Shown: positions 37,571 to 63,993 of the stretch, in pieces
Layout of the letters: the number at the start of each line of letters is the position of its first letter
Position numbering within the stretch: position 1 is the first letter of the stretch
IMG/VR virus record: IMGVR_UViG_3300049855_000348
Location: 124,001-188,000 of that record
Direction: 5' to 3' (one strand)
DNA length: 64,000 nucleotides
Program-made: the position numbers and the translations under genes
The notes under the pieces: model-generated
What the model saw: the letters and a program-made list of their open reading frames with translations, nothing else
What the model was told of the DNA's origin: nothing
Databases searched by the model: none

Positions 37571-37598
37571 AGTATAGCGACTAAAAGGTCGCTGTCAA
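37571..37598 (-). promoter_or_regulatory. Sigma70-type promoter TTGACA-16-TATACT with a perfect GCGAC-N6-GTCGC palindrome as its spacer
   Basis: Minus strand TTGACA GCGAC CTTTTA GTCGC TATACT gtggac ATG. Confidence 0.9.
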
Positions 37599-37602
37599 CA
37601 CC

Positions 37603-37686
37603 CTATCCGAACAGCGCCTTGAGGCGGAACAGGAAGCTCGGCTTCGTGACGGGGTAGCGGCCAGCGGAGTTTGAGGTGTTACGCAC
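37603..37686 (-). CDS. Possible micro-protein (27 aa, MRNTSNSAGRYPVTKPSFLFRLKALFG), not in ORF track
   Basis: GTG start with AGGA 7 nt upstream; codons typical of this genome; fills an intergenic gap. Confidence 0.4.
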   Translation of the reverse strand: MRNTSNSAGRYPVTKPSFLFRLKALFG

Positions 37687-37737
37687 GGTGTGTTCCTACT
37701 AGGGGGAGGCGTTCTGTTTTCTAGAAAATAGAATGGG

Positions 37738-37950
37738 TTAGCGACCACGTGGGGATGGTTCGCCGTCCTTCTGGACGTAGGGGGCGATCTTCACACCCGG
37801 ATTCCAACGTTTCGCAAACGCCGCCTTGTTTCTCTCCCAATGGGCAAGAGCAGCCTCTTCACCCCGTTCGCTTGCGAGGTATTCGTAGATCAAGCCATCG
37901 CTGACGTTGACGTAGAGGTGGACGAGAGGGAGTTCGGCGGTGGTGCTCAT
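37738..37950 (-). CDS. Hypothetical early protein (70 aa), apparently leaderless
   Basis: ATG 6 nt after a perfect TATAAT. Confidence 0.75.
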   Translation of the reverse strand: MSTTAELPLVHLYVNVSDGLIYEYLASERGEEAALAHWERNKAAFAKRWNPGVKIAPYVQKDGEPSPRGR

Positions 37951-37956
37951 GCCCAG

Positions 37957-37984
37957 ATTATAGCGACACTTTAGTCTAAGTCAA
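37957..37984 (-). promoter_or_regulatory. Sigma70-type promoter TTGACT-16-TATAAT with a TAGAC-N6-GTCGC spacer
   Basis: Minus strand TTGACT TAGAC TAAAGT GTCGC TATAAT ctgggc ATG. Confidence 0.9.
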
Positions 37985-38019
37985 CACCTTCCTCAACACC
38001 GGTCATGGCTACATAAGCC

Positions 38020-38196
38020 ATGAACCTCAAGCCCCTCGTCGAAGATACCTGTTCCGGCAACGTGGCTGCATTTACCCGGGCTCGCATTGGTGGCGGGGAT
38101 GACAAGGTCGTCCGCAAGCCTGTAGAAAAGAAGAAGGGTACCGGACTCAAGCCCGGTACCCTCTTCGACTTCGTCAACGGCTACAAGAAACGCTAG
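38020..38196 (+). CDS. 58-aa protein carrying a copy of the predicted mature capsid N-terminus (LVE|DTCSGNVAAFTR), not in ORF track
   Basis: MNLKPLVEDTCSGNVAAFTRARIGGGDDKVVRKPVEKKKGTGLKPGTLFDFVNGYKKR; gcTACATA-agcc-ATG upstream; 11/13 identity to capsid residues 55-67. Confidence 0.8.
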   Translation: MNLKPLVEDTCSGNVAAFTRARIGGGDDKVVRKPVEKKKGTGLKPGTLFDFVNGYKKR

Positions 38197-39569: not shown

Positions 39570-40363
39570 GAGTCGGCTCCCTTATGAGCGAGTTGTTGAC
39601 CGGTGATGGTGATCGTGCCGGAAGTGGTGACGATGTGGACATAGCCGCTGTCGGCTTCCACCTCGATGTCGAGCACGACACCACCACGACACTTGCTGTC
39701 TGGTGTGGTATCGAGTCGACCGAAGAGCTTGGAAGAGAGTTCGGTGTGAAGCTGTTGGAAAGGACGTTCCAGACCGTTGGCCTGAATCAGTGTCTTGGCC
39801 GTCGAATAGGTCGCTTCGTTCTGTGCCAGCGCATAGGCAGCTTCCAGCATCGACTGGAGTTTCTTGTGATCGGTGCGCGGCGGCTTGACGGTGATATTCA
39901 CTGGTCTTTGCGGGGCTGCGATGGTTGGAGCCGGAGCACCAGGAGCGACAGCAGGGGCGCTAGTCGCTGGGCGTGTTGGATCTACCGGGCGCAGATGCTT
40001 TCCAGCCGCAAGGGTTGACGGAGCGACCGCAGCCACGGTGACACCAGACTCACTGATGGGTGAACCGAGCGGAATCGGGCCATTCTCTTCGTGCGGTCGA
40101 GGAACAGCACCTCCAGCACCCATGATCTCAGGAACCGAACCTTCTTCACTGTCGAGATTGATCGCCTTTTTCGGATCGAACGACACGCTCTTGTTCATCT
40201 GAGTTGGTGTCTTCTTCTCATTGAGGACAGTGACGATCTCGGTGTCGTTCAGTTGTCCGAACAGAGCGGCGGTCCATCCGAGAGATTTCACCTTGTGCCA
40301 GATAACACCCTTGGCGATCATGTTCCCTTTGTATGGAATCAGTTCATCGTGATCAAAAGCCAT
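39566..40363 (-). CDS. Hypothetical protein (265 aa, MAFDHDEL...)
   Basis: ATG at 40363 lies 7 nt after the resolvase stop; the longer tracked start overlaps the resolvase. Confidence 0.7.
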   Translation of the reverse strand: MAFDHDELIPYKGNMIAKGVIWHKVKSLGWTAALFGQLNDTEIVTVLNEKKTPTQMNKSVSFDPKKAINLDSEEGSVPEIMGAGGAVPRPHEENGPIPLGSPISESGVTVAAVAPSTLAAGKHLRPVDPTRPATSAPAVAPGAPAPTIAAPQRPVNITVKPPRTDHKKLQSMLEAAYALAQNEATYSTAKTLIQANGLERPFQQLHTELSSKLFGRLDTTPDSKCRGGVVLDIEVEADSGYVHIVTTSGTITITGQQLAHKGADS

Positions 40364-40370
40364 GGTTTCT

Positions 40371-41015
40371 TTACCTGTAAATGGTGATTTTAGCGGCAAC
40401 ATCAAGATCGTCCTTACGAACGCCCAAAGTGCCAGGAATGGGTTTCGCATAGGCAACCAGTGATATCCGTCCTAAGACATAGGCGTCAGCGATATTGTTG
40501 TCGCTGGATTCAAAAGTCCAGCGTTTGTAGACCCCGAGCATCACTTGGTCCTTCTCACACGTCCCTTTGCCGGTGGCGAACTTCTTCAGTCCATTGGTGC
40601 CACAGCAGGCGAAGTGCCAGTCGGTCCTGCTCATCATGATTCTGAAGTGCCAGCCCAGACCACCGAGCTTGGCCATCTGATGAGCTTGAGAGAAGGCGAA
40701 GTCTTCCATCACCGCACAGACCTTGCGACCAGCAGCGATCTCGGTGACAAACTTGTAGGTCTCACTGAACAAAGTGACGATGCGGTGGACTTCATCCATC
40801 GGCGTCGAGCCGGCCTTGGTAGAGATCAGTTTCTGGCCAAGCAATGTGCCCTGGTCGTCAAAGATACAGACGCCAGTGCCGGTCATCGACTGGTCGATGC
40901 CAACATAGACCCCACCCTTCACCCAGGGAGAGACTTGCACGCATGCGGGTACGAGGTTCTTTTTCTTAGCCACTGACACCCTTCCGTCGCGCCCATCGAC
41001 GTTCGTGTTCGACAT
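40371..41015 (-). CDS. ruvC: RuvC-like Holliday junction resolvase (start 41015 or GTG 40973)
   Basis: VGIDQSMTGTG, VMEDFAF, LKKFATGKG...KDQV and NIADAYVL: RuvC acidic catalytic residues. Confidence 0.85.
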   Translation of the reverse strand: MSNTNVDGRDGRVSVAKKKNLVPACVQVSPWVKGGVYVGIDQSMTGTGVCIFDDQGTLLGQKLISTKAGSTPMDEVHRIVTLFSETYKFVTEIAAGRKVCAVMEDFAFSQAHQMAKLGGLGWHFRIMMSRTDWHFACCGTNGLKKFATGKGTCEKDQVMLGVYKRWTFESSDNNIADAYVLGRISLVAYAKPIPGTLGVRKDDLDVAAKITIYR

Positions 41016-41226
41016 TCACCGCTGCGACTTCTTCAGCTTTCAGCGATGGTGACGTGAGCGCACGGAAGTGTTCAGCCTTGAGGCGGATCTCATGTGCGAC
41101 ACGACGCAGTTCGGCTTGGGCCACACCTGCGCCGTGCCCGCCAGCCGCTACCTTCTCTCGATTCAAACGCTGGCTGTTGGCCAGGGTCACGAGATCGTCA
41201 AAGATGCGGATGGCGTCAGGAGTCAT
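40966..41226 (-). CDS. Small helical hypothetical protein (86 aa)
   Basis: TGATG overlap with the upstream gene. Confidence 0.7.
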   Translation of the reverse strand: MTPDAIRIFDDLVTLANSQRLNREKVAAGGHGAGVAQAELRRVAHEIRLKAEHFRALTSPSLKAEEVAAVNVEHERRWARRKGVSG

Positions 41227-41777: not shown

Positions 41778-41845
41778 GGCGTGTTTCTCCACGCCTATGT
41801 AGCTGGACGCAGCGAAAATCAGAGTCAGGAGGGCCAGGGTCCTGA

Positions 41846-44800
41846 TCATACCGGTTTGATCGCCCAGGAGGTCTGCTCATCGACCATGGTGGCCACGATG
41901 GTACCAGCACGGCTGGAACCCGGCACATCGGCGTGGGTGATGACGAAGATCCGCTTCACCCGATTGACCATGGAAGCGATCAGATCCTGCACGGCACGGC
42001 GACCCTTCACGTCGAGGGCGTCGAAGACTTCGTCGAGGGCCAAGAAGCCGGCACGGTGCCGAGAACGCTGACGGGCCAACTCGAAGATCGAGAATAGCGC
42101 AGCCAGATCGGTCCACTTGCGCTGACCGCCTGAGCGCCGGCCATACCGTTCCTGGTAGGTCAGATCCGAGTTGAAGGTGAGGGTCATCTTCCCGCCGAAG
42201 TGTTGTCCGATGTAGGACTGGACGACGAGATTGAGTTGTTTCACGCTCTGGTCAAGCAGGAAACCCCTCATGGAGCCCTTAGCGGCAAAAGCCTTGTCCC
42301 AGAACGTGATGTAAGCCGATTTCAGGTCCAGGGCATGCGCCTGAGCCTTTGAGGTTTCCATCGCAGCGAACGCAGCCTGTCGGTCGGCGACCAAACGGTC
42401 CTTGGCGATCTTCAGAGCGGCAGCCGGGTCGGTGGCGGTGAGGTTGCGCTCCTCTTGAGCCAGGGCCGCCTCGGTAGCGGCTCCACCAGCCTCCAGGGCC
42501 GACTTTTCTTGCAGGAGGGCCGAGAGTTCCCCGGTGAGGCGTTTGTGCTCATCCTGAGCCTTCTGGAGGGCTTCTTTGGCCGAGACGAGATCCGTCACCG
42601 CCTGTGATGCCAGGATCAGATCGGCCTTGGTCCGGTAGGCACTCATGATGGCAAGTAGACCGTCGAGGATCCGCTGGAAGCCGGAGGCAGTGATGATGTC
42701 CTCCAGCCTCTCCGGCATGGGCAGGCACTGGTTGGCCTGTTCTGCGAATCGAGCATCGACCTGCTGCCGGCGTACGGCGATGGCCTGCAACCGAGCTTCC
42801 ATGTCCGGCAGGGACTTGGTCAGCGTTTCGAGCACGGTCTTGGCCGCAGCCAACTGGGCCAGGGTGGCGAGACCCTTGAGGGATTCATCAGCCTGAACTC
42901 GCAGTGCCTGGGCTTCGCTGATGAGTTTGGTCTGTTCGGCTTTGTAGGTCCGGTACCCTGCTCGCAGGCTCTCCAACTCAGCGTTGAGACCCTTCACCAC
43001 GTTGACCATCGATTCGCCATTGATCGAAGTCAGACACGTCGGGCAGTCACCACCAGTGGTGAGCTTTGAGAGCTTTTCAGCCTTCTGTGAGATCGGCGTT
43101 GCTTGCGTGGTGGTGGCCTCGGCCTTCGCACCTTCAGCCGCAGCCAACTGATCTTTCTGTGTTGCCTCTTGGCGGAGGACGTTGGCACGTTCATTGGCAG
43201 CAACCACTGCCGCTTCCTGTTTCAGTGCCGCTTCGAGACCAGTGATGCGATCACGAACAGTGCCGATCTCCGACTTGAGGATGTTCTCCTCGTTGGTGAT
43301 GTTGTTGTGATCGATGCAGCGGGAATTCCAAAGCGATTGAAAGCGAACGATGTTCTTGTTGGTCTCTTCCGCCTTGTCGACGTTGGCCTTCGCCTCGACA
43401 CGGATCGCCTCGACACCACCAGAGAGTAGTTGGACCTTCTCGGTCGCAGCCTTCACCACATCGTTGCTGTACTGAATAGTCTGCTCACCACTGGCTTCTG
43501 CATACATCAAACGTTCGCGTTCTTGACGCATCTTGACCTGATGGTCGTTCTTGCGCTGGGCCACTGAACTCAACATCACCTGATGATTCTTTTCAGCGTC
43601 GAGGATCTGCGTTTCGATGGCAGAGATCTGCGCTGCTGAGCGTTCGATTTCACCAGCACGAACCTTCTGAATGTTGGCCTGTTGTTCGAGTTGATCACTC
43701 ATGAGTTTCTTCAACTCACGAGTCTTCTCCAGGTAAGCGTCGAAGCGTTCGAGACCCAGCATCTCTTCGATCATGGCACGACGTTTCTTCTCGTCTCCGG
43801 TCATGAAGTTGGCCGTCACGTTTTGGCCCATGATGTAGGAACGACTGTAGGTCTCACGGTCGATGCCGATGAGATCGATGATCATCTTCTGGGTAGCTTT
43901 CGGATCACCCTTCTCGAATGACTCTTGATAGACGCCATCCTTGTAGACCTTCACACCAGTACCGCCGAGGTCGTGGTACTTGCGGAAGCGTTCGATGCTC
44001 CAGCCGTTGGCATGGTTCACCCGAACGTAGCAGTTCTTCCCCTTGCCGGTGAACTGAGGGTCGTAGACCACATCGTCAGCCTTCATCTCATCACGGATGG
44101 TCTCGCCGAAGTAGCACCAGAAGATAGCTTCGAGGAACGTGCTCTTGCCGGCACCGTTCTCACCTTCGAGGTACCACACGCCTGGACGCAGGTCATCAAA
44201 ATTGATGGTGATCTTTTCCTTCACACCAAGGAAGCCCTCAAGAGTCAGGCTGGAGACTTCACCATCGAAAGCCATGCCACCCTTTTCGGCATCTTGGAAA
44301 CGTGAATTCACCTCAGCGATGATCGATTTGCCGAACTGGATGGTGATGTCCACATCCAATTGACTATCGCCAGTGATGACCGACTTCACGAAGGGCTCGA
44401 CGAGGCCAGCGGCGGAGGTGGCTTCAACACCGAGGACTTCAACCTCCTGATCACGAATCGCTTTCTCGATGACCGACTCTTTGCGTACCGAGATGACACC
44501 GGCAGCTTCGAGCTTCAGTTGCAGGGCTTCGTGCTGCTCATCGGTGACGAGGTCGTCATAGATGACAGTGACGAAGCAGTCCTTGAGTGTGGTCAGATCC
44601 TGCGGCAGATCGCTGACACCGAGAACCTTGAAGGCATCGTGGTGTGGATTGAGGATGAACCGGTCGTTACCGGTATCCATGTCGAGGACCATGATACCAC
44701 GCTGGTCACCGGCATCGCCGAAATTGAACTGGAGGGGTGAGCCGCAATAGGTCACCCGGTGATCCATGCGCTGGAAGACGTGGAAGTGGCCAGAGTAGGT

Positions 44801-45337
44801 GGCCTTGAATGGGGCGAACACGTCGGGACCGACAGCACCAGAGAAGGTGGTCTTGTAGCGGGTGTTCTGTACCGCACCGTTGATGCCGAGGTGACCGAAC
44901 ACGGTCATCTTGGCGGCACGCTCGGGGAACTGCCGGGCGAAGTCCTGCACGAAGGCGACGATCTTCGACTGGTCTTCGTAGTAGGGGATGAACAGGAAAT
45001 GATCACCTACCGGGGTGATCTCACGGAAGACCTTGATCTTCGGATGCATATCCAGTCCGTCGAGACTGCTGACGGAGGTAGAATGCTTGAGGTTGAGATC
45101 GTGGTTGCCCAGGGTGAGGAACACCGGCCACTTGTCGGCGAGCTTGCGAAAGAAGTTGATGGCAGCCGACTGGCTGACCACATCGACCGCTTCACGGGTA
45201 ACCAGGGCATCACCCATGCAGACGACGGCCTGCACGCCTTGTCGTTGGAACTCTTCAATGATCCAGTCGCCGGTTTTGATGATGCGATCCAGCCCCTGTG
45301 GCTGGAAGTGGATGTCAGAGAAGATTCCAAGTTGCAT
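41846..45337 (-). CDS. Fused Mre11/SbcD (gp47-like) nuclease + Rad50/SbcC (gp46-like) ATPase in one ORF
   Basis: Metallophosphoesterase motifs SDIH, MGD, GNHD, GH and GHFH, then Walker A GENGAGKS, coiled coil with CPTC hook, signature SGGQ, Walker B LDEVFDALD and VITH; no intervening stop. Start 45337 or 45340. Confidence 0.93.
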   Translation of the reverse strand: MQLGIFSDIHFQPQGLDRIIKTGDWIIEEFQRQGVQAVVCMGDALVTREAVDVVSQSAAINFFRKLADKWPVFLTLGNHDLNLKHSTSVSSLDGLDMHPKIKVFREITPVGDHFLFIPYYEDQSKIVAFVQDFARQFPERAAKMTVFGHLGINGAVQNTRYKTTFSGAVGPDVFAPFKATYSGHFHVFQRMDHRVTYCGSPLQFNFGDAGDQRGIMVLDMDTGNDRFILNPHHDAFKVLGVSDLPQDLTTLKDCFVTVIYDDLVTDEQHEALQLKLEAAGVISVRKESVIEKAIRDQEVEVLGVEATSAAGLVEPFVKSVITGDSQLDVDITIQFGKSIIAEVNSRFQDAEKGGMAFDGEVSSLTLEGFLGVKEKITINFDDLRPGVWYLEGENGAGKSTFLEAIFWCYFGETIRDEMKADDVVYDPQFTGKGKNCYVRVNHANGWSIERFRKYHDLGGTGVKVYKDGVYQESFEKGDPKATQKMIIDLIGIDRETYSRSYIMGQNVTANFMTGDEKKRRAMIEEMLGLERFDAYLEKTRELKKLMSDQLEQQANIQKVRAGEIERSAAQISAIETQILDAEKNHQVMLSSVAQRKNDHQVKMRQERERLMYAEASGEQTIQYSNDVVKAATEKVQLLSGGVEAIRVEAKANVDKAEETNKNIVRFQSLWNSRCIDHNNITNEENILKSEIGTVRDRITGLEAALKQEAAVVAANERANVLRQEATQKDQLAAAEGAKAEATTTQATPISQKAEKLSKLTTGGDCPTCLTSINGESMVNVVKGLNAELESLRAGYRTYKAEQTKLISEAQALRVQADESLKGLATLAQLAAAKTVLETLTKSLPDMEARLQAIAVRRQQVDARFAEQANQCLPMPERLEDIITASGFQRILDGLLAIMSAYRTKADLILASQAVTDLVSAKEALQKAQDEHKRLTGELSALLQEKSALEAGGAATEAALAQEERNLTATDPAAALKIAKDRLVADRQAAFAAMETSKAQAHALDLKSAYITFWDKAFAAKGSMRGFLLDQSVKQLNLVVQSYIGQHFGGKMTLTFNSDLTYQERYGRRSGGQRKWTDLAALFSIFELARQRSRHRAGFLALDEVFDALDVKGRRAVQDLIASMVNRVKRIFVITHADVPGSSRAGTIVATMVDEQTSWAIKPV

Positions 45338-45343
45338 CATCTC

Positions 45344-45371
45344 ATCCTAGCGACATTTTGGTCTAAGTCAA
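45344..45371 (-). promoter_or_regulatory. Sigma70-type promoter TTGACT-16-TAGGAT with a TAGAC-N6-GTCGC spacer
   Basis: Minus strand TTGACT TAGAC CAAAAT GTCGC TAGGAT gagATGATG; the second ATG is 6 nt from the -10 hexamer. Confidence 0.85.
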
Positions 45372-45670
45372 ATGGACAGCGGCTTGCCCGCCAGCACGTC
45401 ATTTAGGGTCCAACGAGACCTCATCACTTTTTATCACACGTTCTCGTCTGATGGGGATTACCCGTGTGGTACCTGGGAATCTAGTCCCTTGGCGGTTAGA
45501 GCCACCGGCTCGATCTACGTCTGATGTGAGGATTGAATTACCCCAGCATTTCAACTACTCGGATCAGGAGTCACCGTCCCGGCTTCGCGTAGCCTCGAAA
45601 TGCCGAGGTTTCCGGCTTGGCTACCATATCGGTGAAGTTTGGTGGGCTACCGACGCTCCCACCAGGAATC
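45372..45670 (-). ncRNA. About 300-nt non-coding, hairpin-dense segment; candidate structured RNA or cis element
   Basis: No credible ORF; at least six short stems and a duplicated GGGTAAT...CATCAGACG unit. No known RNA family recognised. Confidence 0.35.
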
Positions 45671-49650: not shown

Positions 49651-49678
49651 ACGATGGCGTCAATAGTGTCGCTGTCAA
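49651..49678 (-). promoter_or_regulatory. Candidate promoter TTGACA-GCGAC-N6-GACGC-CATCGT
   Basis: Perfect -35 and the palindrome in the same register as the other copies; weak -10. Confidence 0.6.
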
Positions 49679-51266: not shown

Positions 51267-51635
51267 CTACCGTTCGATATGAATGAGGCGAAGTTGCCGC
51301 TGAAACGCCCGTCTCAATGACTTCTTCAGCGTGGGGATCCGATCTTGCGGGATGCCCAGGAATTCTGCAACACGTTCTTCGGTCCAGCGTTCTCCCGCCT
51401 GTTGCAAGGCGAAATCCATCGGAACGTTGTAGATGAAGTCAAACAACTTGCGCTGTTCTTCAGTCTTCAACCAGTCACGGACTTTGCCCATGAAGGCTGA
51501 GTCCTTGAGTAACTGCGTCTCGAACGATCCTTCAACTGAAGCATCCGAGGATGACTTCGGCAACGCGCTGAAGTCGATCTTTGGCGGTGACGACAACCGT
51601 ACGGTAAGAGTGGGTGTAGTGGTTCGCTGCGGCAT
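51267..51635 (-). CDS. Small protein with a C-terminal sigma-region-4-like HTH (start uncertain; possibly 51491)
   Basis: WTEERVAEFLGIPQDRIPTLKKSLRRAF resembles region-4 HTHs; the tracked start overlaps the upstream gene by 104 nt. Confidence 0.6.
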   Translation of the reverse strand: MPQRTTTPTLTVRLSSPPKIDFSALPKSSSDASVEGSFETQLLKDSAFMGKVRDWLKTEEQRKLFDFIYNVPMDFALQQAGERWTEERVAEFLGIPQDRIPTLKKSLRRAFQRQLRLIHIER

Positions 51636-52722: not shown

Positions 52723-52750
52723 TGTATAGCGACAAAAAGATCGCGCACAA
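52723..52750 (-). promoter_or_regulatory. Candidate promoter TTGTGC-GCGAT-N6-GTCGC-TATACA
   Basis: Same 6+16+6 architecture as at 37571, 37957 and 45344. Confidence 0.7.
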
Positions 52751-53090: not shown

Positions 53091-53129
53091 GGCTGGCAGA
53101 CTACTGGCTTGTAGCACCCACACAAGCAA

Positions 53130-53890
53130 TAGCAGTCAAAGGATCGCTAGGATTGACCCATCAAAATTGCCTTACTCAAAACTGCAAGGGTCAAAAAAAA
53201 CCCGGCGGAGTAAAATTTATAAAATTTATAAAAGTCATAAATTACTTGACAAAATATAATCTATCTGAGAATTGCCTTTGTCATGTCTTGCATTGCCAGG
53301 GTCCTGCCCTTGGATCAAGGTGGTAACAACTTAGCGCGAAGCGCGATAACTTACACTGACTGAGCTAAGCTAGGCTGTCCTTACAAGGAGAGTAAGAACA
53401 GCAAGACTTACAAGACTTGCAAGTCTTTCGCATTTTTGAAAGACGTGGTAGGGACTGCATAGACATCACTGGGGTATGAGAAGTCGCTACGCGAACTGGC
53501 ATGAACCTATGTTCTTGAGGATGACCACACCTTCATGAGCAAGTCTTCGCGCTTCGCGCTGAGGGTGTCTTGCCCTTGAGCTAAGGGTATGAAAGCATCA
53601 CTGGGATAGCTGGGGTCATGCAAGGCTTGTAAGCCGAGCAAGGCTTTCAAACCACACAGCCTAGCAAGCCACCGGCTTTCCGTTTTCTGGCCATCTGACG
53701 GGCTGTAGGTCGCCCAATGACCATCCAGGGTCAACCTGTCTCAAATCGCCCAGGAACGGCTCGATTGAGTACCCCTGATGAGATACGGATTGGTGTGACA
53801 CGGGTCAATAGAGACACTACCACATCCAGTATCGTGTTGTATTGACAGTTTTTGGGTGATGCCACACTTCGGCCTTCCGGTCTAAGTCAA
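53130..53890. other. Candidate replication origin / control region
   Basis: About 760 nt without a credible ORF at the strand switch. It holds an AT-rich tract with TAAAATTTA tandem repeats, six CAAG-D-CTT octamers and two oppositely oriented GCGC-GAA-GCGC hairpins. Confidence 0.6.
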
Positions 53891-53905
53891 CACCCAGAGG
53901 AAGTC

Positions 53906-54523
53906 ATGCAAACGATCTACGACATCGAAACCATTGCCGTTCTCGATGCCAAGTCGATCAACCGTCGTTCCTTCCGATCTGGACCAGCCTCACGCATCCT
54001 TTCAATTTACGATGACCCTGAGATCCTACGGAAGCGACTTGAAGCGAATGTCCCCTGCCCGCTCAAAATGGCGATTGAAAAAAATGGTTACGATCCCGCC
54101 AATCCTCCGAAGTTGAAGCGCGGTCATTACATGGATCCGAAGGAGTTGTTCTACCGCACCATGAAAGTTCAGATGGCTGGTGGAATCGACAAAGCGGGTC
54201 GTGATGGAGAACGTTTCATCGAACTGCTGACCCTGCTGGCGAATGGTTATATGGGTCGCATCATGTTCAAGGATACCGGCTCGATGGCCAATCTCACTGA
54301 AGACATGGTGCAAGAAGCTATCACCAAGTGTGCGATGATCGTCATGCGCTTCAATCCCTGGGACCCCCGCGCCACCAAACCCACTCTCAATAACGCTTTC
54401 GCCTATTTCACCACGGTTATCCGCAATCGCTTCTATGAAACACTCACTTGCCCATTGGTCGGGTCGGATGTGTTCCTCGAAGATCTCAAAACCGAAAACC
54501 AGTCGATCGGTGATTTGATTTGA
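53906..54523 (+). CDS. gp55: Late-transcription sigma factor, T4 gp55-like
   Basis: HYMDPKEL...LANGY...F...EDMVQEAI...RFNP...AFAYFTTVIRNRF parallels gp55 (YVNNKEL...IAEG...NF...EMIADGI...NFD...PHAYIT); SD GAGGAAG. Confidence 0.8.
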   Translation: MQTIYDIETIAVLDAKSINRRSFRSGPASRILSIYDDPEILRKRLEANVPCPLKMAIEKNGYDPANPPKLKRGHYMDPKELFYRTMKVQMAGGIDKAGRDGERFIELLTLLANGYMGRIMFKDTGSMANLTEDMVQEAITKCAMIVMRFNPWDPRATKPTLNNAFAYFTTVIRNRFYETLTCPLVGSDVFLEDLKTENQSIGDLI

Positions 54524-54547
54524 CTTAGCGACAATTTGGTCTAGATT
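54520..54547 (+). promoter_or_regulatory. Candidate promoter TTGACT-16-TAGATT overlapping a GCGAC-N6-GTCTA site
   Basis: TTGACT ta GCGAC AATTTG GTC TAGATT; palindrome shifted 2 nt relative to the other copies. Confidence 0.6.
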
Positions 54548-54759
54548 GGCTTCCTGGAGGAAGTCCGTTTGACGAACTGTGCGACTGGCATCACGAGTGC
54601 ATCTCGTGACTCATCAACCAATGCGTCGATCTCCGCTGGCTCGATCTCGCCTTTGGCGGCTCGGGTGGCGATCAACTCGAATTTGTCGTGCAGGATTTCT
54701 TCCAGCCGCTTCGAGAGCGTGAAGATGTCACGCGCATGGTTTTTCTGAGATTCCGCCAT
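54541..54759 (-). CDS. Small helical hypothetical protein (72 aa, MAESQKNHARDIF...)
   Basis: Typical codons (ATC, GAG, GAC); amphipathic; its ATG shares the CATG palindrome with the primase start. Confidence 0.55.
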   Translation of the reverse strand: MAESQKNHARDIFTLSKRLEEILHDKFELIATRAAKGEIEPAEIDALVDESRDALVMPVAQFVKRTSSRKPI

Positions 54760-58913: not shown

Positions 58914-58946
58914 GCCTCTTCGTCAACTCACAGCACAGAAAAAACC

Positions 58947-60230: not shown

Positions 60231-60237
60231 TGTGACC

Positions 60238-60266
60238 TGCCCCGGGAGGGATGCTCTCCCGGGGCA
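60238..60266 (+). terminator. Hairpin after uvsX
   Basis: tgccccgggag/ctcccggggca 11-bp stem; no U tract, so possibly a processing or stability hairpin. Confidence 0.55.
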
Positions 60267-60281
60267 CTACATGAGAGAGCC

Positions 60282-60515: not shown

Positions 60516-61118
60516 ATGACCAAAGAACAACAATCTGTCGATGTCGAGTGCAAGCATGAGGTGGTCAACTACTCCATCCCGGCGATCTGTGCCAAGTGTG
60601 GTGCGCAGGTCGACGAGGGTATCGTAGCGGTGAAACTCTCAGACCTACCTGCCGACAAACAAGCCACGATTGCAGAACTCGCCCATGGTCTGCCTGACGT
60701 GGAGATCGGAGATGTCGAGTCGACTCCGGCTGCCATCAACATGCGTCGGCCACTCAAGATCCGTGCCGGTATCGAAAGAAAGCCCGCCAAGGCCGATTCC
60801 AAACCCTCAGAAGGCAAGAAGCCAGCCAAGGGAGCCATCACCAAGATCGAGGCTCTAAACGCCAAGGAACGCATCTTCGTGGTCAACGGGGTGAAGTTCT
60901 ATGCCGCCGTGACCGACTCCGGCTTCCGGGTGCTCGCTGCCTGCCATGAGTCGAAGAAGACCCTGGAGTCGGCTGCTCGGGTGCTGGAGATCAAAGGCTG
61001 GATCCCGAAGGTCAAACGCTCGAAGGACGACAAGAGTCTGTTCTCGCTGGAAGCCAAAGAGAAGCGCCCGTCCGGCCCCTGGCCTGATGAGGACCCAGTC
61101 GAAGAGAAGAAAGCCTAG
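60516..61118 (+). CDS. Hypothetical protein (200 aa) with N-terminal C-x-H...CxxC
   Basis: ATG immediately after the upstream TGA; typical codon usage. Confidence 0.75.
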   Translation: MTKEQQSVDVECKHEVVNYSIPAICAKCGAQVDEGIVAVKLSDLPADKQATIAELAHGLPDVEIGDVESTPAAINMRRPLKIRAGIERKPAKADSKPSEGKKPAKGAITKIEALNAKERIFVVNGVKFYAAVTDSGFRVLAACHESKKTLESAARVLEIKGWIPKVKRSKDDKSLFSLEAKEKRPSGPWPDEDPVEEKKA

Positions 61119-61486
61119 CCGTCTACGGTCACCTCGGTGATCCGCTTGGTCGGGTCCTCGGCGAAGTGCCAGACTGGCTGCTTGCCCGGGATCTCTTCTT
61201 TACAACTCAAACACCGGATGACGAGGGTGTAGCGCAACGGGGATCGTTTGGTCGAAACGATGTGGCAATCGTGGGTATAGATTGCGAGCCCTTGGCGTGG
61301 TCGGATGAAGGCGACGCTATGCCCCAGCCGACCAGGGGATGGGAATCGATGTAGGAACACCTTGCGGAAGCTCCTCTGTGAGACGATCTCGACAATGAGG
61401 ACTCCATGACCGGAGGTATCATCGTACTGGGTGATCTCCCAGGACAGACTGTCACACCGGTGAAATTTCCACTTACCGCCACTCAT
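61115..61486 (-). CDS. Hypothetical beta-rich protein (123 aa)
   Basis: Downstream of a palindrome-containing promoter; shares a CTAG stop palindrome with the 60516 gene. Confidence 0.6.
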   Translation of the reverse strand: MSGGKWKFHRCDSLSWEITQYDDTSGHGVLIVEIVSQRSFRKVFLHRFPSPGRLGHSVAFIRPRQGLAIYTHDCHIVSTKRSPLRYTLVIRCLSCKEEIPGKQPVWHFAEDPTKRITEVTVDG

Positions 61487-61516
61487 GCCTAGAACCTAGC
61501 ATGGTTGGTGTGGAAT

Positions 61517-61566
61517 ACAATAGCGATCAAAATGTCGCTTGATTTTGAAGTCTGATTTGGTACACT
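61517..61566. promoter_or_regulatory. Divergent promoter pair around a GCGAT-N6-GTCGC site
   Basis: Leftward: palindrome followed by TATTGT (-10). Rightward: TTGATT (61539) -16- TACACT (61561) -6- ATG 61573, with the palindrome abutting its -35. Confidence 0.75.
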
Positions 61567-61572
61567 GCGGGC

Positions 61573-61683
61573 ATGTTCAAACTCCCCATCCTGGCAGTCC
61601 TCCTCATCGCCACCTTCGCCTGCGGTCTCTACGTGGGCCACAAGCTCGGCTTCGCCCACGCGCAGAAGATCCAGACCAAGTGA
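61573..61683 (+). CDS. 36-aa single-TM micro-protein (MFKLPILAVLLIATFACGLYVGHKLGFAHAQKIQTK), not in ORF track
   Basis: Leaderless geometry (6 nt after TACACT); GTGA overlap with the next gene; hydrophobic helix. Confidence 0.75.
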   Translation: MFKLPILAVLLIATFACGLYVGHKLGFAHAQKIQTK

Positions 61684-62069
61684 GTAAGCCGGTTCAGGTC
61701 TATGATGGCAATGGGTTATTCGATAACGAATACTTCATAGCCAAAGAGTCGACCAAGATCGTCCTCGAACTGAAGGGATTGTTGATCGCACTTGAACGAT
61801 ATGCCAAGATGGGTGTTCGCAGAAAAGACGTTCACGGACACGATCTCGAACCACTGGATCCGGAAGAAATCTCACAAATTATAGAAAGCGCCAAAGCGGT
61901 TTATGATTGGCTGAATGATTTTGAACCTTACGAACTAGCGGCACCCGTCATTTATAGACTCGGCTTCCTTGCTGGGGAGTGTGTGAAGAAAGGATTCAAT
62001 CCGTTTGCAGCCCAACTCCATCAGCTTGTCGGCGGAATGAGTAAGATCCATGAATCACGCCGTCATTGA
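61680..62069 (+). CDS. Hypothetical protein (129 aa, MSKPVQVYDGNG...)
   Basis: GTG start overlapping the micro-protein stop; first of three genes sharing an N-terminal motif. Confidence 0.75.
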   Translation: MSKPVQVYDGNGLFDNEYFIAKESTKIVLELKGLLIALERYAKMGVRRKDVHGHDLEPLDPEEISQIIESAKAVYDWLNDFEPYELAAPVIYRLGFLAGECVKKGFNPFAAQLHQLVGGMSKIHESRRH

Positions 62070-62472
62070 TGTCGTTCAAGTCTACGAGGGTGACGGTGTC
62101 AAACCGCCACGACGGAAAATCGTACGTCCTCCGAAGCCGTTCGAGAACGAAGGGAAGTTTCGGATCACCATCAATGATATCACGTTCATCATCAACTATA
62201 AGGTCCAAGAGTTCAAACAACATGGTGTGGTGACGAGTCAAAACGTTGCTGTGACCGGTTGCGGTTTTGGCGGAGTCTTCACCTCCAGTGATCTCAAATT
62301 ACAGGAACCGGTGAAGATCAGACAGGTCATGGTCGGCAAACAAAAAGTGCAGACCTACCTGTGGGATCTCGATGTTCTCATGATCACACGTATGACGCTT
62401 GAACGCTTCGGCGATCACCTCGCCAAGCATGCAGCCCACAAGAAAAAATACTACAAGAAGAGGACATGGTGA
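62050..62472 (+). CDS. Hypothetical protein (140 aa, ...VQVYEGDG...)
   Basis: Operon-coupled; shared N-terminal motif. Confidence 0.75.
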   Translation: MNHAVIDVVQVYEGDGVKPPRRKIVRPPKPFENEGKFRITINDITFIINYKVQEFKQHGVVTSQNVAVTGCGFGGVFTSSDLKLQEPVKIRQVMVGKQKVQTYLWDLDVLMITRMTLERFGDHLAKHAAHKKKYYKKRTW

Positions 62473-63167
62473 TGGAGATCCAGTGCTATGATGGTGATGG
62501 AGTTGAGCCATTATACGTTCGTCAGAAACGCGAAGCCGAGGAGGCTCGCTATCGCAGGCGTGTTGAGCAGGTTGGTCTGCGTCTGGCAAATCGTGAGCGC
62601 CGTGAACGCCATCGTTCAGAGCGTCAGAAGGCCAAGCCCATCGTTCGTTGTGAACGATTCGAGATGCGACGTGTCGGCAACAAGACCCATTTCCACATCA
62701 AGTCGACTGATCACCCAACCAAGCTGATCTTCTTCGCCGGTGACCATTTCAGGGAGATGACCTTTCGTTACCCTTCCTACGATGATGTCAGAGACCCCAT
62801 GCGGATGCCGGTGGTCCTCAGGGCTGTCAACGTGAAGGTCCTCCAGATGCATGCCGTCGAACCCATGGGTTCTGACGATGACACTCCGTTGTTCTATGAG
62901 ACTTCGATCACCATCGAATCAGACACCCTCATCAACGAGTCGGCCAAGGTTTACAAAGCCTTCCGAGACTCTATCTGTCTCCCCATTCCAACCCTGAAGG
63001 GCACTCATGGCTCAATACAGCCTGGGCAAGTGGCGTCATCCGAAGACCGAGCAGATTCGGATCTACCTCAACGGCCTCGACAGCACCGAGCAAAAGGTGT
63101 GGTTCGAGAGGGGGGAGCGAAAAAACGACCAGCTTCCGCCCGAGTTCGGCATCAAGCTGTGTTGTGA
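62472..63167 (+). CDS. Hypothetical protein (MEIQCYDGDG...); the last 54 or so residues overlap the next gene
   Basis: TGATG overlap at the start; shared N-terminal motif; 161-nt 3' overlap is suspicious. Confidence 0.65.
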   Translation: MEIQCYDGDGVEPLYVRQKREAEEARYRRRVEQVGLRLANRERRERHRSERQKAKPIVRCERFEMRRVGNKTHFHIKSTDHPTKLIFFAGDHFREMTFRYPSYDDVRDPMRMPVVLRAVNVKVLQMHAVEPMGSDDDTPLFYETSITIESDTLINESAKVYKAFRDSICLPIPTLKGTHGSIQPGQVASSEDRADSDLPQRPRQHRAKGVVREGGAKKRPASARVRHQAVL

Positions 63168-63288
63168 AAACACGGTAACGCTGACCAAGCAGGAGGTTGT
63201 GGAGGAGATCGCCGAGGCGTTCTCCGAGATGGACCTCTTCCTCGACAAGACCACCTGGAGCCGCCTGGGAAGGGCTGCTAGCTGGTAA
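63007..63288 (+). CDS. Hypothetical protein (93 aa)
   Basis: GAAGGG SD; typical codon usage. Confidence 0.75.
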   Translation: MAQYSLGKWRHPKTEQIRIYLNGLDSTEQKVWFERGERKNDQLPPEFGIKLCCENTVTLTKQEVVEEIAEAFSEMDLFLDKTTWSRLGRAASW

Positions 63289-63295
63289 CTAAGTC

Positions 63296-63793
63296 ATGCC
63301 GGTCACGCTCCCATCCCCGATCCTCTACAGCGCCCTGACCATGCTTCAGGACACGGATGAGAACGTCATCCTCCAGCGCCTGTACGACCGTGATGAAGCC
63401 CTACTGGCCGCCTTCAACGCCCTCAACGACATCCGTGAAGACCTGATTGCCCAGTTCTCCCGCTTCGACGATATCGAAGCCCGTATCCGCTCGATCGGCA
63501 ACATCATCAACGCCATCATCGCAGCGTTCTATCAGGACATCGACGGTAACGGCATCGTTCCGGACAACTACGCCTTCTTCAACCAGTTGATCGCCGACCT
63601 GAAGTTGAACATCAATGCGATCAACGCCGTCAGTGGTGGCATCATCAACTTCCTTGGTGTTCAGACCGCTGTGACGCCGGTTGCTGAGCATCTGGCCCGT
63701 CTCCAGGGGCTCGACAATCTGATCAAGGAAAAGTTGAACTACATCTACAGCAAGTGGGACATCGATCCGAACGACGATCTACTCTCGCTGTGA
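63296..63793 (+). CDS. Helical hypothetical protein (165 aa) with a DxDxNG loop
   Basis: TAACTA-agtc-ATG start; heptad-like helices around QDIDGNGIV. Confidence 0.75.
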   Translation: MPVTLPSPILYSALTMLQDTDENVILQRLYDRDEALLAAFNALNDIREDLIAQFSRFDDIEARIRSIGNIINAIIAAFYQDIDGNGIVPDNYAFFNQLIADLKLNINAINAVSGGIINFLGVQTAVTPVAEHLARLQGLDNLIKEKLNYIYSKWDIDPNDDLLSL

Positions 63794-63966
63794 CGCAGGA
63801 CGAGATCTACAAGATCTTCGCCAAATTCGTGGTGGGTAATCCAACCGCAAAAGCCGACGCTGTTGTAAAACACGTGCTATCGGCTTCTGGTGGATTCGGT
63901 GATCCGGTAACCATCAGCATCTGGTACAGTCAGTGGAGAATCATCTGGACCGAGTTGGCTCTCTAG
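63790..63966 (+). CDS. Small hypothetical protein (58 aa, MTQDEIYKIF...)
   Basis: GTGA overlap with the upstream stop. Confidence 0.65.
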   Translation: MTQDEIYKIFAKFVVGNPTAKADAVVKHVLSASGGFGDPVTISIWYSQWRIIWTELAL

Positions 63967-63993
63967 TTGACAGCGACATTTTGGTCTTATATT
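63967..63993 (+). promoter_or_regulatory. Candidate promoter TTGACA-GCGAC-N6-GTCT-TATATT at the window edge
   Basis: Perfect -35 immediately followed by the recurring palindrome; the downstream gene lies outside the window. Confidence 0.7.

What the first reader, a model, noticed from the sequence alone, without database searches (positions are those of the whole stretch)
37571..63993. Regulon of sigma70-type promoters whose entire 16-bp spacer is a GCGAC-N6-GTCGC palindrome
Cores seen: 37577-37592 (GCGAC-taaaag-GTCGC, perfect), 37963-37978, 45350-45365, 49657-49672, 52729-52744, 54528-54543, 61523-61538 and 63973-63988, with partial sites at 53132-53147 and 53869-53884. In most, the 5+6+5 palindrome sits exactly between a TTGAC[AT]-like -35 and a TANNNT-like -10, and the N6 core is A/T-rich. 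TTGACTTAGAC recurs verbatim three times. The sites control early small genes, the Mre11-Rad50 fusion, primase and both arms of a divergent locus. Spacer sequence is normally free, so this points to a dimeric phage or host regulator acting on a replication/recombination regulon. I do not recognise the operator from any described system.
Basis: partly seen in the sequence, partly recalled or inferred. Interest (0 to 1): 0.78.

Follow-up and report, generated by a model that had tools for sequence, protein, structure and literature searches.

The report
Leaderless promoter cassettes with built-in operator
An uncultivated 220-kb T4-related phage drives its non-late genes from about 45 near-identical host-type promoter cassettes that carry a conserved two-fold-symmetric site inside the promoter. 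Most of them appear to start the mRNA right at the AUG, so this is a compact variant of known phage promoter and operator designs, not a special replication regulon.

Summary
The motif is real but was described too narrowly. All ten listed cores are in the sequence. The strict GCGAC-N6-GTCGC pattern occurs once and is barely above chance.

The real unit is a roughly 45-nt cassette: (TAG)GTG-TTGAC(T/A)-(T/G)(A/C)GACC-N4-GGTCGC-TATA(C/A)T-6 nt-ATG.

- **Scale.** The window lies in a 220,489-bp phage with 41 such sites and none in control scans. The sites lie between genes and point at a downstream ORF. None falls in the head and packaging block. This is the phage's general pre-late promoter class, not a replication regulon.
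- **Leaderless starts.** In 25 of 41 sites an ATG opening a long ORF follows the -10 hexamer by 3-9 nt, and by exactly 6 nt in 21. That predicts leaderless mRNAs.
- **Conservation.** Metagenomic relatives keep the cassette at orthologous places, one at only 34% protein identity. In a few promoters the symmetric site sits over the -10 hexamer or next to the -35 hexamer instead of in the spacer.
- **Interpretation.** I read the site as an operator for a phage-encoded dimer that shuts early promoters off. Late genes would use a T4 gp55-like sigma factor. The regulator is not identified and no transcript start is mapped.

It is a new variant of a known kind, of moderate interest.

The parts
37571..37598 (-). 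Canonical cassette: -35 TTGACA 37593-37598, dyad spacer GCGACCTTTTAGTCGC 37577-37592 (the only perfect palindrome), -10 TATACT 37571-37576, then 6 nt and ATG 37562-37564.
   Evidence: (PWM 42.4 bits)
37283..37564 (-). 93-aa ORF that starts at the predicted +1 of the 37598 cassette (leaderless type). Function unknown.
37957..37984 (-). Canonical cassette: TTGACT, TAGACTAAAGTGTCGC, TATAAT, then 6 nt and ATG 37948-37950. It sits at the border of a hypervariable block of small unique genes.
   Evidence: (50.8 bits)
37738..37950 (-). 70-aa ORF that starts at the predicted +1 of the 37984 cassette (leaderless type).
45344..45371 (-). Canonical cassette: TTGACT, TAGACCAAAATGTCGC, TAGGAT. ATG-ATG follows at 45335-45340, 3 and 6 nt after the -10 hexamer. 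A small conserved hairpin lies just upstream at 45374-45392.
   Evidence: (31.5 bits)
41846..45340 (-). Mre11-Rad50 (SbcD-SbcC) fusion gene, 1164 aa. The metallophosphatase domain starts at residue 2, so the start codon next to the promoter is the true start.
49651..49678 (-). Site after the DnaB gene: TTGACA, GCGACACTATTGACGC, CATCGT. The -35 and dyad are conserved in four genomes but the -10 is poor in all of them.
   Evidence: (19.3 bits)
52723..52750 (-). Cassette with a weak -35: TTGTGC, GCGATCTTTTTGTCGC, TATACA, and a 28-nt leader. It heads the operon with a 147-aa gene, an AAA protein, the sigma4-like gene and DnaB.
   Evidence: (20.4 bits)
54520..54547 (+). Variant promoter upstream of the primase gene: TTGACT, TAGCGACAATTTGGTC, TAGATT. 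The dyad (54528-54543) is shifted 2 nt towards the -10 hexamer and its half-sites are reversed.
   Evidence: (spacer PWM 24.5 bits on the - strand)
61523..61538 (.). Near-perfect dyad GCGATCAAAATGTCGC outside any spacer. It abuts the -35 of the + strand promoter at 61539-61566. On the - strand it is followed by TATTGT with no -35.
61539..61575 (+). Leaderless-type promoter with no dyad in its spacer: TTGATT, 16 nt, TACACT, 6 nt, ATG 61573-61575. The ORF is a 36-aa hydrophobic peptide.
   Evidence: gene call
63967..63993 (+). Variant cassette: TTGACA, GCGACATTTTGGTCT (15-nt spacer, half-sites reversed), TATATT, then 7 nt and an ATG at window position 64001, just past the window end.
53863..53890 (-). 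Decayed copy: GGTG-TTGACT-TAGACC is kept but the right half (GGCCGA) and the -10 (AGTGTG) are lost. It lies in the leader of the late-sigma gene.
53126..53153 (-). Partial site: GCGATCCTTTGACTGC followed by TATTGC, with no -35.
53906..54523 (+). T4 gp55-like late sigma factor, 205 aa. It defines a separate late promoter class.
   Evidence: phrog_234, E 3.7e-6
51267..51491 (-). 74-aa stand-alone protein with a sigma-region-4-like helix-turn-helix (P0054). It is the only detected DNA-binding candidate, and its role is unproven.
21020..21025 (-). TAGATA(A) motif upstream of a gene in the head block. It is a candidate late promoter element and contrasts with the dyad class.
23223..23228 (-). TAGATA motif 4 nt before the ATG of a 71-aa gene between the terminase and portal genes.

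Best explanation
The sites are the standard early or middle promoter module of an uncultivated, lytic, T4-superfamily phage of about 220 kb.

**What each module contains**
- It is built for host sigma70 RNA polymerase: -35 TTGAC(T/A), a 16-bp spacer and -10 TATA(C/A)T.
- It is packed so that nothing is wasted. The stop codon of the upstream gene often lies inside the module, as TAG just before the -35 or as TGA inside TTGAC.
- In about 60% of modules the A of the start codon is the seventh base after the -10 hexamer. The mRNA is therefore predicted to begin with AUG and to be leaderless.

**The symmetric element**
- The spacer carries an imperfect two-fold-symmetric element, (T/G)(A/C)GACC-N4-GGTCGC, with an A/T-rich centre.
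- I infer that it is an operator read on duplex DNA by a dimeric, phage-encoded protein.
- Sitting between or on the -35 and -10 hexamers, that protein would block polymerase and shut the whole class off together when the phage moves to late transcription.
- Late transcription would use the gp55-like sigma factor and a different motif, TAGATAA.

**Shown:** the motif, its number, position, orientation and conservation, the fixed ATG distance, and the separate late sigma factor.

**Inferred:** the transcription start point, leaderless translation, the existence and identity of the binding protein, and repression as its effect.
For: **Number and specificity**
- 41 PWM sites against 0 in the control; 39 against 0 by pattern.
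- The dyad is enriched 15-fold in intergenic DNA.
- Every site is followed on its own strand by an ORF that starts within 160 nt.
- No site lies in window 1-37,500, which holds the major head, portal and terminase genes.
- 33 of the 41 near-consensus sigma70-type matches found in intergenic DNA carry the dyad in the canonical register. The other 8 are tRNA-region or AT-rich-region matches or carry the dyad in another register.

**Leaderless starts**
- 25 of 41 sites have an ATG opening an ORF of at least 40 codons 3-9 nt after the -10 hexamer, and 21 have it at exactly 6 nt. The background for any TANNNT is 3.3%.
- Only 2 of these 25 ORFs have an in-frame downstream start with a Shine-Dalgarno-like 4-mer.
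- The Mre11 domain begins at residue 2 of the fusion protein.
- The first ten codons of these genes are A/C-rich.

**Selection rather than recent copying**
- The half-sites are about as informative as the -35 and -10 hexamers, while the centre varies.
- Orthologous cassettes are kept in relatives whose fusion protein is 47-78% identical.
- One cassette is kept between two genes whose proteins are only 34% identical, in a 45% GC contig.

**The dyad as a separate module**
- It is centred on the -10 hexamer at G000 41727 and at the DnaE promoter, G000 44829.
- It is centred on the -10 hexamer in the L021 ortholog of the fusion-gene promoter, whereas G000, L019 and L020 have it in the spacer.
- It is reversed, shifted or placed beside the -35 at window 63973, 54528 and 61523.
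- The centre is an A-tract in either orientation.
- It does not act as a hairpin: 7 of 8 sites fold no better than shuffled sequence.

**Phage-encoded factor and late switch**
- Relatives range from 45 to 63% GC, which makes a host-specific factor less likely.
- The phage has a gp55-like sigma factor.
- TAGATAA has 12 of its 15 copies in intergenic DNA, including upstream of the tail sheath gene and of head-block genes.
Against: - No transcript 5' end is mapped. The one metatranscriptome that holds the phage gave five tiny contigs inside genes.
- No binding protein is identified. Searches for HTH_3, GerE and HTH_17 found nothing. The only candidate is a sigma4-like 74-aa protein. It is also present in relative L025, whose surveyed locus lacks the full dyad.
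- The dyads in non-canonical registers are few: 5 strict ones against about 2.3 intergenic hits expected by chance.
- The left half-site covaries with the last base of the -35 hexamer. Cassettes also share sequence into the first codons. Copying or gene conversion therefore contributes to the similarity.
- The GC just before the -10 hexamer could be a polymerase contact rather than part of an operator.
- The host is unknown.
Confidence: 0.55

Rival explanations
1. There is no separate regulator. The conserved spacer is part of what RNA polymerase itself reads, either the host holoenzyme or a phage-modified one. For example the GC at -14 and -13, the -35-like GAC pentamers and the A-tract could tune strength or let phage promoters outcompete host promoters.
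For: - The right half GTCGC abuts the -10 hexamer in the same register in 38 or more of 41 sites and is as conserved as the hexamers.
- All half-sites look like the -35 core (TTGAC, TAGAC, GCGAC).
- The 16-bp spacing is almost invariant.
- No repressor-type protein was found.
- The phage encodes a sigma-region-4-like mini-protein that could alter how the -35 region is read.
- From my own knowledge, T4 early promoters also show conservation beyond the two hexamers.
Against: - A polymerase contact should be fixed in strand and register. Here the dyad also occurs reversed, shifted by 2 nt, centred on the -10 hexamer and beside the -35 hexamer. It also changes register between orthologous promoters.
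- The central A-tract occurs in both orientations.
- The two-fold symmetry itself has no known role in sigma70 recognition.
Confidence: 0.25
2. The similarity mainly reflects mobility. The cassette would be a portable promoter and start-codon module, like the PeSL cassettes of T4-type phages. It would spread and be homogenised by recombination and serve as the joint for swapping accessory genes. The dyad would be a passenger or a recombination feature.
For: - The phage belongs to the T4 superfamily: gp23-type head protein and gp55-like sigma factor.
- Cassettes share 44-55 bp at 89-95% identity, reaching into the first codons.
- Identical spacers recur within one genome.
- The left half covaries with the -35 hexamer.
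- Directly after the cassette at window 37984, and after its orthologs, lies a block of small genes with no homologs between the genomes. That block is bounded by a conserved helicase gene.
- Assembly graphs of DNA runs join at the cassette.
- A stem-loop precedes the cassette at 45374-45392.
- PeSLs are described in PMC2839356 and PMC4122927.
Against: - Copying alone does not explain why the half-sites stay fixed while the centre and flanks diverge.
- It does not explain why an orthologous cassette keeps the dyad at 34% protein identity and a different GC content.
- Most cassettes have no adjacent stem-loop. The upstream stop codon is inside the cassette instead.
- This rival is compatible with the main explanation rather than exclusive of it.
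Confidence: 0.15
3. One reading: a dedicated operator that marks a replication and recombination regulon.
For: In the window the sites do precede the Mre11-Rad50 gene, the DnaB operon, the flap-endonuclease operon and the primase gene. DnaE has a variant site.
Against: - 36 of the 41 canonical sites lie outside the window.
- Most of them precede small genes of unknown function, and some lead operons that hold tRNA genes or the tmRNA gene.
- The element is on nearly every near-consensus sigma70-type promoter in intergenic DNA, so it does not mark a functional subset.
Confidence: 0.04
4. Hairpin or cruciform promoters for a virion RNA polymerase, as in phage N4.
For: There is an inverted repeat, and a 3994-aa ORF lies in the window.
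Against: - Only the single perfect palindrome folds (-5.4 kcal/mol). The other sites fold no better than shuffled sequence.
- The usual stem is 3-4 bp.
- Good -35 and -10 hexamers flank the repeat.
- The giant ORF is repeat-rich.
Confidence: 0.01

Closest known systems
PeSL cassettes (early promoter plus stem-loop) of T4-type phages (PMC2839356, PMC4122927)
   Same: - Short, highly similar early-promoter modules repeated many times in a T4-superfamily genome.
- They lie at the edges of variable blocks of small unique genes.
- At 45374-45392 a stem-loop lies directly upstream of the promoter.
   Different: - Here the conserved extra element lies inside the promoter spacer and is a weak dyad that does not fold.
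- Most modules have no terminator.
- The modules end in a start codon for a leaderless mRNA.
- A role in recombination has been examined at only one locus.
Operators that overlap core promoters in lambdoid phages (lambda or 434 Cro and CI; the P22 Arc operator between -35 and -10 of Pant). This comparison is from my own knowledge.
   Same: - A two-fold-symmetric site of 14-21 bp with half-sites about one helical turn apart.
- A non-contacted centre that prefers A/T.
- Placement between or on the -35 and -10 hexamers, so that binding excludes polymerase.
   Different: - Those systems have a few operators at one or two control regions of temperate phages. Here about 45 copies cover the whole pre-late programme.
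- This phage has no detectable integrase or ParB.
- The binding protein is unknown.
Dispersed repressor sites: stoperators of cluster A mycobacteriophages (PMC9283540, PMC6550527) and the C1 operators of phage P1 (P1 from my own knowledge)
   Same: One regulator recognition sequence is repeated tens of times across a phage genome, in intergenic DNA and in a set orientation relative to transcription.
   Different: - Stoperators and C1 operators are asymmetric, are bound by monomers, mostly lie outside promoters and serve lysogeny.
- Here the site is symmetric and built into the promoter.
T4 temporal promoter classes: early sigma70 promoters, MotA-box middle promoters and gp55 late promoters (from my own knowledge)
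   Same: - Host polymerase is used throughout.
- A gp55-like late sigma factor is present.
- There is a distinct short late motif (TAGATAA against TATAAATA in T4).
   Different: - A MotA box replaces the -35 hexamer. Here the -35 hexamer is intact and the extra element lies in the spacer.
- No MotA or AsiA homologue came up in any search run here. No search was aimed at them.
Leaderless genes marked by a -10-like signal about 10 nt upstream of the start codon (PMC3160421); lambda cI from PRM (from my own knowledge)
   Same: - TANNNT lies 6 nt before the ATG.
- There is no Shine-Dalgarno sequence.
- The 5' coding region is A/C-rich.
   Different: - Here a full -35 hexamer and a spacer dyad are attached.
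- The arrangement is used for about 60% of one phage's promoters.
- Other genes of the same phage use Shine-Dalgarno leaders.

Membership tests
sigma70-type (housekeeping) promoter | A -35 hexamer close to TTGACA | tested here: met
   TTGAC is at 92-97% per position over the 41 sites.
sigma70-type (housekeeping) promoter | A -10 hexamer of the form TAnnnT, 16-18 bp downstream of the -35 hexamer | tested here: met
   The consensus is TATA(C/A)T. The spacer is 16 bp in 31 of the 33 canonical cassettes picked up by the generic scan. An independent scan ranks 37984 and 37598 at 11 of 12 matches.
sigma70-type (housekeeping) promoter | Transcription starts about 7 nt after the -10 hexamer with the host holoenzyme | tested here: inconclusive
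   The only RNA run with the phage gave 5 short contigs inside genes and no 5' ends. The host is unknown.
Leaderless mRNA | The start codon lies at the transcription start, with a -10-like signal about 10 nt upstream of the start codon | tested here: met
   25 of 41 sites have the ATG 3-9 nt after the -10 hexamer, 21 of them at 6 nt. The background is 3.3%. The transcription start itself is inferred.
Leaderless mRNA | No Shine-Dalgarno sequence and no alternative start that has one | tested here: met
   The promoter fills the upstream DNA. Only 2 of 25 genes have an in-frame downstream start with a Shine-Dalgarno-like 4-mer.
Repressor operator overlapping a promoter | A two-fold-symmetric site with half-sites about one helical turn apart | tested here: met
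   The core is GACC-N4-GGTC, and the outer two positions are only partly symmetric (TA against GC).
Repressor operator overlapping a promoter | The site overlaps the -35 to -10 region, so that binding would exclude polymerase | tested here: met
   The dyad is in the spacer in 41 sites. It is over the -10 hexamer at G000 41727, G000 44829 and L021.
Repressor operator overlapping a promoter | A cognate DNA-binding protein | tested here: inconclusive
   No HTH_3, GerE or HTH_17 domain was found in the phage. One sigma4-like 74-aa protein was found. Binding was not tested.
PeSL cassette of T4-type phages | The host phage belongs to the T4 superfamily | tested here: met
   The major head protein matches phrog_138 at E 4e-47 and is distantly T4-type. 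The phage has a gp55-like sigma factor.
PeSL cassette of T4-type phages | An early promoter joined to a stem-loop terminator | tested here: not met
   A stem-loop abuts the cassette at 45374-45392 only. In at least 12 cassettes the upstream stop codon lies inside the cassette, which leaves no room for a terminator.
PeSL cassette of T4-type phages | The cassette lies at the borders of variable gene blocks | tested here: met
   This was seen at one locus compared across four genomes. It was not tested genome-wide.
MerR-type spacer operator | A dyad in an over-long spacer of 19-20 bp | tested here: not met
   The spacer is 16 bp, or 15 bp in variants.
N4-type hairpin promoter | A stable extruded hairpin with a 5-7 bp stem and a 3-nt loop | tested here: not met
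   7 of 8 sites fold no better than shuffled sequence.
Stoperator-type dispersed repressor sites | An asymmetric site bound by a monomer, mostly outside promoters, in a temperate phage | tested here: not met
   The site is symmetric and lies inside promoters. No integrase or ParB was found.

The most novel reading that the evidence does not exclude
A lytic T4-superfamily jumbo phage may have wired its whole pre-late programme as self-contained cassettes of stop codon, promoter, operator and AUG. Three things would follow.
- The early proteins would be translated from leaderless mRNAs.
- One global switch would act on all roughly 45 promoters at once.
- That switch would be the phage's stand-alone sigma-region-4-like mini-protein. 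It would bind the -35-like GAC half-sites and compete with host sigma70.

The same cassettes would also act as recombination joints for swapping accessory genes.
Probability: 0.15. Interest if true: 0.8.

Novelty: new variant of a known kind. Interest (0 to 1): 0.55.

Why it matters
If the reading is right, three things follow.
- It is a very compact way for a large lytic phage to express and silence dozens of early operons together. The promoter, the operator, the upstream stop codon and the start codon fit in about 40 nt.
- It gives a ready-made, testable set of natural leaderless expression modules.
- It extends the idea of portable promoter cassettes in T4-type phages to a distant, uncultivated lineage.

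It also helps annotation. In this lineage, gene starts can be placed exactly from the promoter.

Tried and rejected
**Relatives and host**
- Close relatives among isolated phages: none by megablast or tblastn.
- Relatives in IMG/VR and in GTDB genomes: none. The 15 IMG/VR pattern hits are single sites in unrelated low-GC contigs, at about the number I estimate for chance.
Relatives cannot be drawn for a virus record. Two further contigs had no DNA available.
- The host therefore stays unknown.

**Transcript starts**
- Laying a metatranscriptome on the window gave only five small contigs inside genes.

**Phage sigma factor or regulator**
- No region 2 or region 4_2 match was found. Region 4 gave one weak match.
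- No HTH_3, GerE or HTH_17 domain was found.
- The profile of the 74-aa protein found nothing significant among solved structures by sequence.

**Other candidate regulators**
- The 123-aa - strand ORF at 61115-61486 gave nothing usable.
- The conserved 58-aa + strand ORF at 38020-38196 is basic, has no helix-turn-helix and overlaps a terminator hairpin.
- The small leaderless genes examined have no DNA-binding signature.

**Other ideas**
- Temperate lifestyle: no integrase or ParB.
- Hairpin mechanism: rejected.
- Rfam on the window and on the 750-bp non-coding region: nothing.
- PHROG annotation of ten genes that follow TAGATAA motifs: no hits.

Full report
**1. Checking the observation**

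TTGACTTAGAC occurs three times in the window, always on the - strand.

The palindrome as written is not statistically remarkable. GCGAC-N6-GTCGC has one perfect match (37577-37592) against 0.15 expected. With up to two mismatches there are 67 matches against 51.5 expected.

The signal lies in the longer unit that the sites share. On the - strand between 37 and 53 kb each core is flanked by TTGAC(A/T) and TATA.

**2. Scale**

The window is bases 124,001-188,000 of a 220,489-bp virus record.
- TTGAC-N3-GAC-N6-GTCGCTATA with up to three mismatches has 39 hits there and none for the reversed pattern.
- An iterated position weight matrix (PWM) settles on 41 sites above 12 bits. The reversed sequence gives none.
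- The sites lie between genes. 34 of 41 have their centre in intergenic DNA by a crude longest-ORF gene call. Intergenic DNA is 11% of the genome.
- Each site is followed on its own strand by an ORF.
- A degenerate, self-complementary form of the dyad has 34 intergenic hits against 2.3 +/- 1.3 expected. Its centre is 73% A/T in intergenic hits and 47% in coding hits.

**3. Anatomy**

The consensus is (t)AGGTG, TTGAC(T/A), (T/G)(A/C)GAC(C), N4, (G)GTCGC, TATA(C/A)T, ctgGGC, ATG.
- The right half GTCGC carries 1.2-1.7 bits per position, about as much as the two hexamers.
- The left half is TAGAC in about two thirds of sites and GCGAC in about a quarter.
- The symmetric core is therefore GACC-N4-GGTC, with an A-tract centre in either orientation: AAAA 9 times, TTTT 5 times.
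- The last base of the -35 hexamer covaries with the left half: T with TA 21 times, A with GC 8 times.

**4.

In 25 of 41 sites an ATG that opens an ORF of 57 to 1164 codons lies 3-9 nt after the -10 hexamer. In 21 sites the distance is exactly 6 nt, which puts the A at the canonical +1. The background for any TANNNT in the genome is 3.3%.

Three further results support this ATG as the true start:
- Only 2 of the 25 ORFs have any in-frame downstream start with a Shine-Dalgarno-like 4-mer.
- For the Mre11-Rad50 fusion the metallophosphatase domain begins at residue 2.
- Gene calls in relatives use the same ATG.

The first ten codons of these genes are A/C-rich and G/T-poor (p between 1e-3 and 6e-5). 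From my own knowledge, this matches what favours leaderless translation. A -10-like signal about 10 nt before the start codon is the accepted in silico mark of leaderless genes (PMC3160421).

The remaining promoters have short leaders, and about half of these carry a Shine-Dalgarno-like 4-mer such as AAGGAG.

In at least 12 cassettes the stop codon of the upstream gene is inside the cassette. It is TAG at -6 to -4 relative to the -35 hexamer, or TGA within TTGAC. Gene, promoter and next gene are packed with no spare bases.

No 5' end is mapped. The only RNA run that holds the phage gave five small contigs inside genes.

**5. What the phage is**

The phage comes from a freshwater sediment metagenome.
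- It is a myovirus with a tail sheath and a DnaE-type polymerase.
- Its major head protein is T4-type, and the window also holds portal and large terminase genes.
- The genome holds 33 tRNA genes and a tmRNA gene.
- No integrase or ParB was found.
- The window encodes a gp55-like late sigma factor at 53906-54523 (phrog_234, E 3.7e-6).
- No sigma region 2 domain was detected by Pfam.

The head and packaging block (window 1-37,500) has no cassette. Several genes there, and the sheath gene, are instead preceded by TAGATAA. That motif has 12 of its 15 genomic copies in intergenic DNA. The cassette is therefore the pre-late promoter class.

It is not restricted to replication genes. Of the 41 near-consensus sigma70-type matches found in intergenic DNA, 33 carry the dyad in the canonical register. 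The other eight are tRNA-region or AT-rich-region matches, or carry the dyad in another register.

**6. Conservation**

A homology search with the fusion protein found a clade of metagenomic relatives.
- Loci from relatives at 78, 58, 57 and 47% identity (L019, L020, L021, L023; 54-63% GC) carry the cassette. This includes orthologous positions before the fusion gene and after DnaB, and it includes the leaderless ATG. The spacer centre differs between genomes.
- A 1.4-kb, 45% GC contig (L044) encodes 34%-identical homologs of two adjacent genes of this phage. The cassette TTGACT, TAGACTCAAATGTCGC, TATACT, cctggc, ATG lies between them.
- Loci from relatives at 39-41% identity (L024-L026) lack the dyad in the replication module and mostly use Shine-Dalgarno leaders. 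L024 has one TTGACA-16-TACACT-6-ATG promoter without a dyad.

The half-sites are therefore under selection and are not just young copies.

**7. Is the dyad a separate module?**

Several promoters carry the dyad in another register:
- At G000 41727, GCGAC-TACTAT-GTCGC has the -10 hexamer as its centre.
- The DnaE promoter is TTGCGT-15-TAGAGT-7-ATG with GCGATAGAGTGATCGC over the -10 hexamer.
- The L021 ortholog of the fusion-gene promoter has GCGATAGATTGGTCTA over its -10 hexamer. G000, L019 and L020 have the dyad in the spacer.
- In the window, the 63967 promoter has the half-sites reversed in a 15-bp spacer.
- At 54528 the dyad is shifted by 2 nt.
- At 61523 it abuts the -35 hexamer of a leaderless + strand promoter, TTGATT-16-TACACT-6-ATG.

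These cases are few: five strict dyads against about 2.3 intergenic hits expected by chance. They argue for a protein site that only has to overlap the core promoter, and against a fixed polymerase contact, but they do not prove it.

The element does not act as a hairpin. Seven of eight sites fold no better than shuffled sequence.

**8. Mechanism**

A symmetric site centred near -21, or over the -10 hexamer, in a 15-16 bp spacer is placed to exclude polymerase. Activators bind further upstream, and MerR-type activators need spacers of 19-20 bp (both points from my own knowledge).

I therefore favour a phage-encoded dimeric repressor that turns the whole class down as late transcription starts. 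The factor is more likely phage-encoded than host-encoded because relatives spanning 45-63% GC keep the same half-sites.

The protein is not identified:
- Its AlphaFold model has a mean pLDDT of 80.
- The model matches sigma region 4 domains almost exclusively. TM-scores are about 0.5-0.57 and the best probability is 0.96, but the E-values are weak.
- The Pfam Sigma70_r4 match is weak, with best E 0.003. Language-model neighbours are stand-alone region-4 proteins.
- The half-sites resemble the -35 core (TTGAC, TAGAC, GCGAC), so this protein is a tempting binder.
- However, it could equally be a partner of the gp55-like sigma factor. It is also encoded in L025, whose surveyed locus lacks the full dyad.

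**9. A second layer**

The cassette at window 37984 and its orthologs mark the start of a block of small genes that have no homologs between the four genomes compared. The block is bounded on the far side by a conserved helicase gene.

Cassettes also share 44-55 bp at about 90-95% identity. This parallels the PeSL cassettes of T4-type phages (PMC2839356, PMC4122927). Recombination between cassettes probably contributes both to their similarity and to gene turnover.

**10. Verdict**

Three parts of the reading need correction:
- It is the general pre-late promoter class, not a replication regulon.
- The palindrome is imperfect.
- The cassette is fused to a start codon for leaderless expression.

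The operator idea is plausible and remains unproven. The closest known systems are promoter-overlapping operators of lambdoid phages, dispersed repressor sites of mycobacteriophages and phage P1, and PeSL cassettes. The combination and the scale make this a new variant of a known kind.

Noticed in passing
window 53130-53905: A non-coding region of about 750 bp lies between the divergent DnaB-side and late-sigma/primase-side operons. It has an A/T-rich repeat (aaaatttataaaatttataaaa, around 53210-53235) and several GC-rich hairpins. Rfam finds nothing (best E 0.06). Relative L024 has a similar 828-bp region at the same place. It may be a replication origin or an unknown RNA.
   Followed up: partly
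window 21020-21025 and 23223-23228; G000 106056, 103464, 5764, 8616, 50163, 54171, 219747: The motif (C/G)TAGATAA has 15 copies, 12 of them in intergenic DNA, and each points at a downstream gene. One subset reads GCTAGATAAGCC-ATG, with only 4-5 nt before the start codon. It is a likely late promoter for the gp55-like sigma factor, and possibly also leaderless.
   Followed up: partly
window 53906-54523 (+): The phage encodes a T4 gp55-like late sigma factor although its polymerase is DnaE-type. Pfam Sigma70_r2 does not detect it. Only PHROG 234 does.
   Followed up: partly
G000 1-130 and 220370-220489 (outside the window): Both contig ends consist of a 15-bp tandem repeat (AGCTCGTCAAGCTCA). 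The 'direct terminal repeat' label of the record probably reflects a tandem repeat at an assembly break, not true genome ends.
   Followed up: no
G000 18491-23006, 39879-40769 and 85462-85837 (outside the window): There are 33 tRNA genes in two clusters and a one-piece tmRNA with tag DDHVEYGRIALAA. A cassette at G000 86228 lies about 360 nt upstream of the tmRNA gene.
   Followed up: no
window 178-12162 (-): A 3994-aa ORF with internal repeats of about 140-170 nt at 80-86% identity. It lies upstream (5') of the head and packaging block on the - strand.
   Followed up: no
window 54757-54760: The primase ATG (+ strand) and the ATG of a conserved ORF of about 72 aa on the - strand overlap within CCATGG. 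Relative L020 has the same arrangement. Each gene's promoter must then lie inside the other gene.
   Followed up: partly
window 38134-38163 (-) and 38020-38196 (+): A strong terminator-like hairpin (13-bp stem) follows the 458-aa gene. It lies inside a 58-aa + strand ORF that gene callers annotate in all relatives. It is unclear whether the peptide, the hairpin or both are conserved.
   Followed up: partly
window 45372-45396: The 25 nt just upstream of the fusion-gene cassette (gtgctggcgggcaagccgctgtcca) are about 90% identical in three genomes whose proteins are 58-78% identical. The stretch includes a small hairpin.
   Followed up: no
L028-L030, L035-L037, L040, L041 (IMG/VR contigs, 37-43% GC): An unrelated low-GC phage group carries one promoter, TTGACT GCGACTTTGT(T/C)ATCGC TATGCT, that resembles the cassette. 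There is one copy per contig, so it is probably coincidence.
   Followed up: no
window 37944-37989, DNA runs X1, X2 and X5: Assembly contigs of several metagenomes break or join at the cassette. This is what a repeat of about 45 bp would cause.
   Followed up: no
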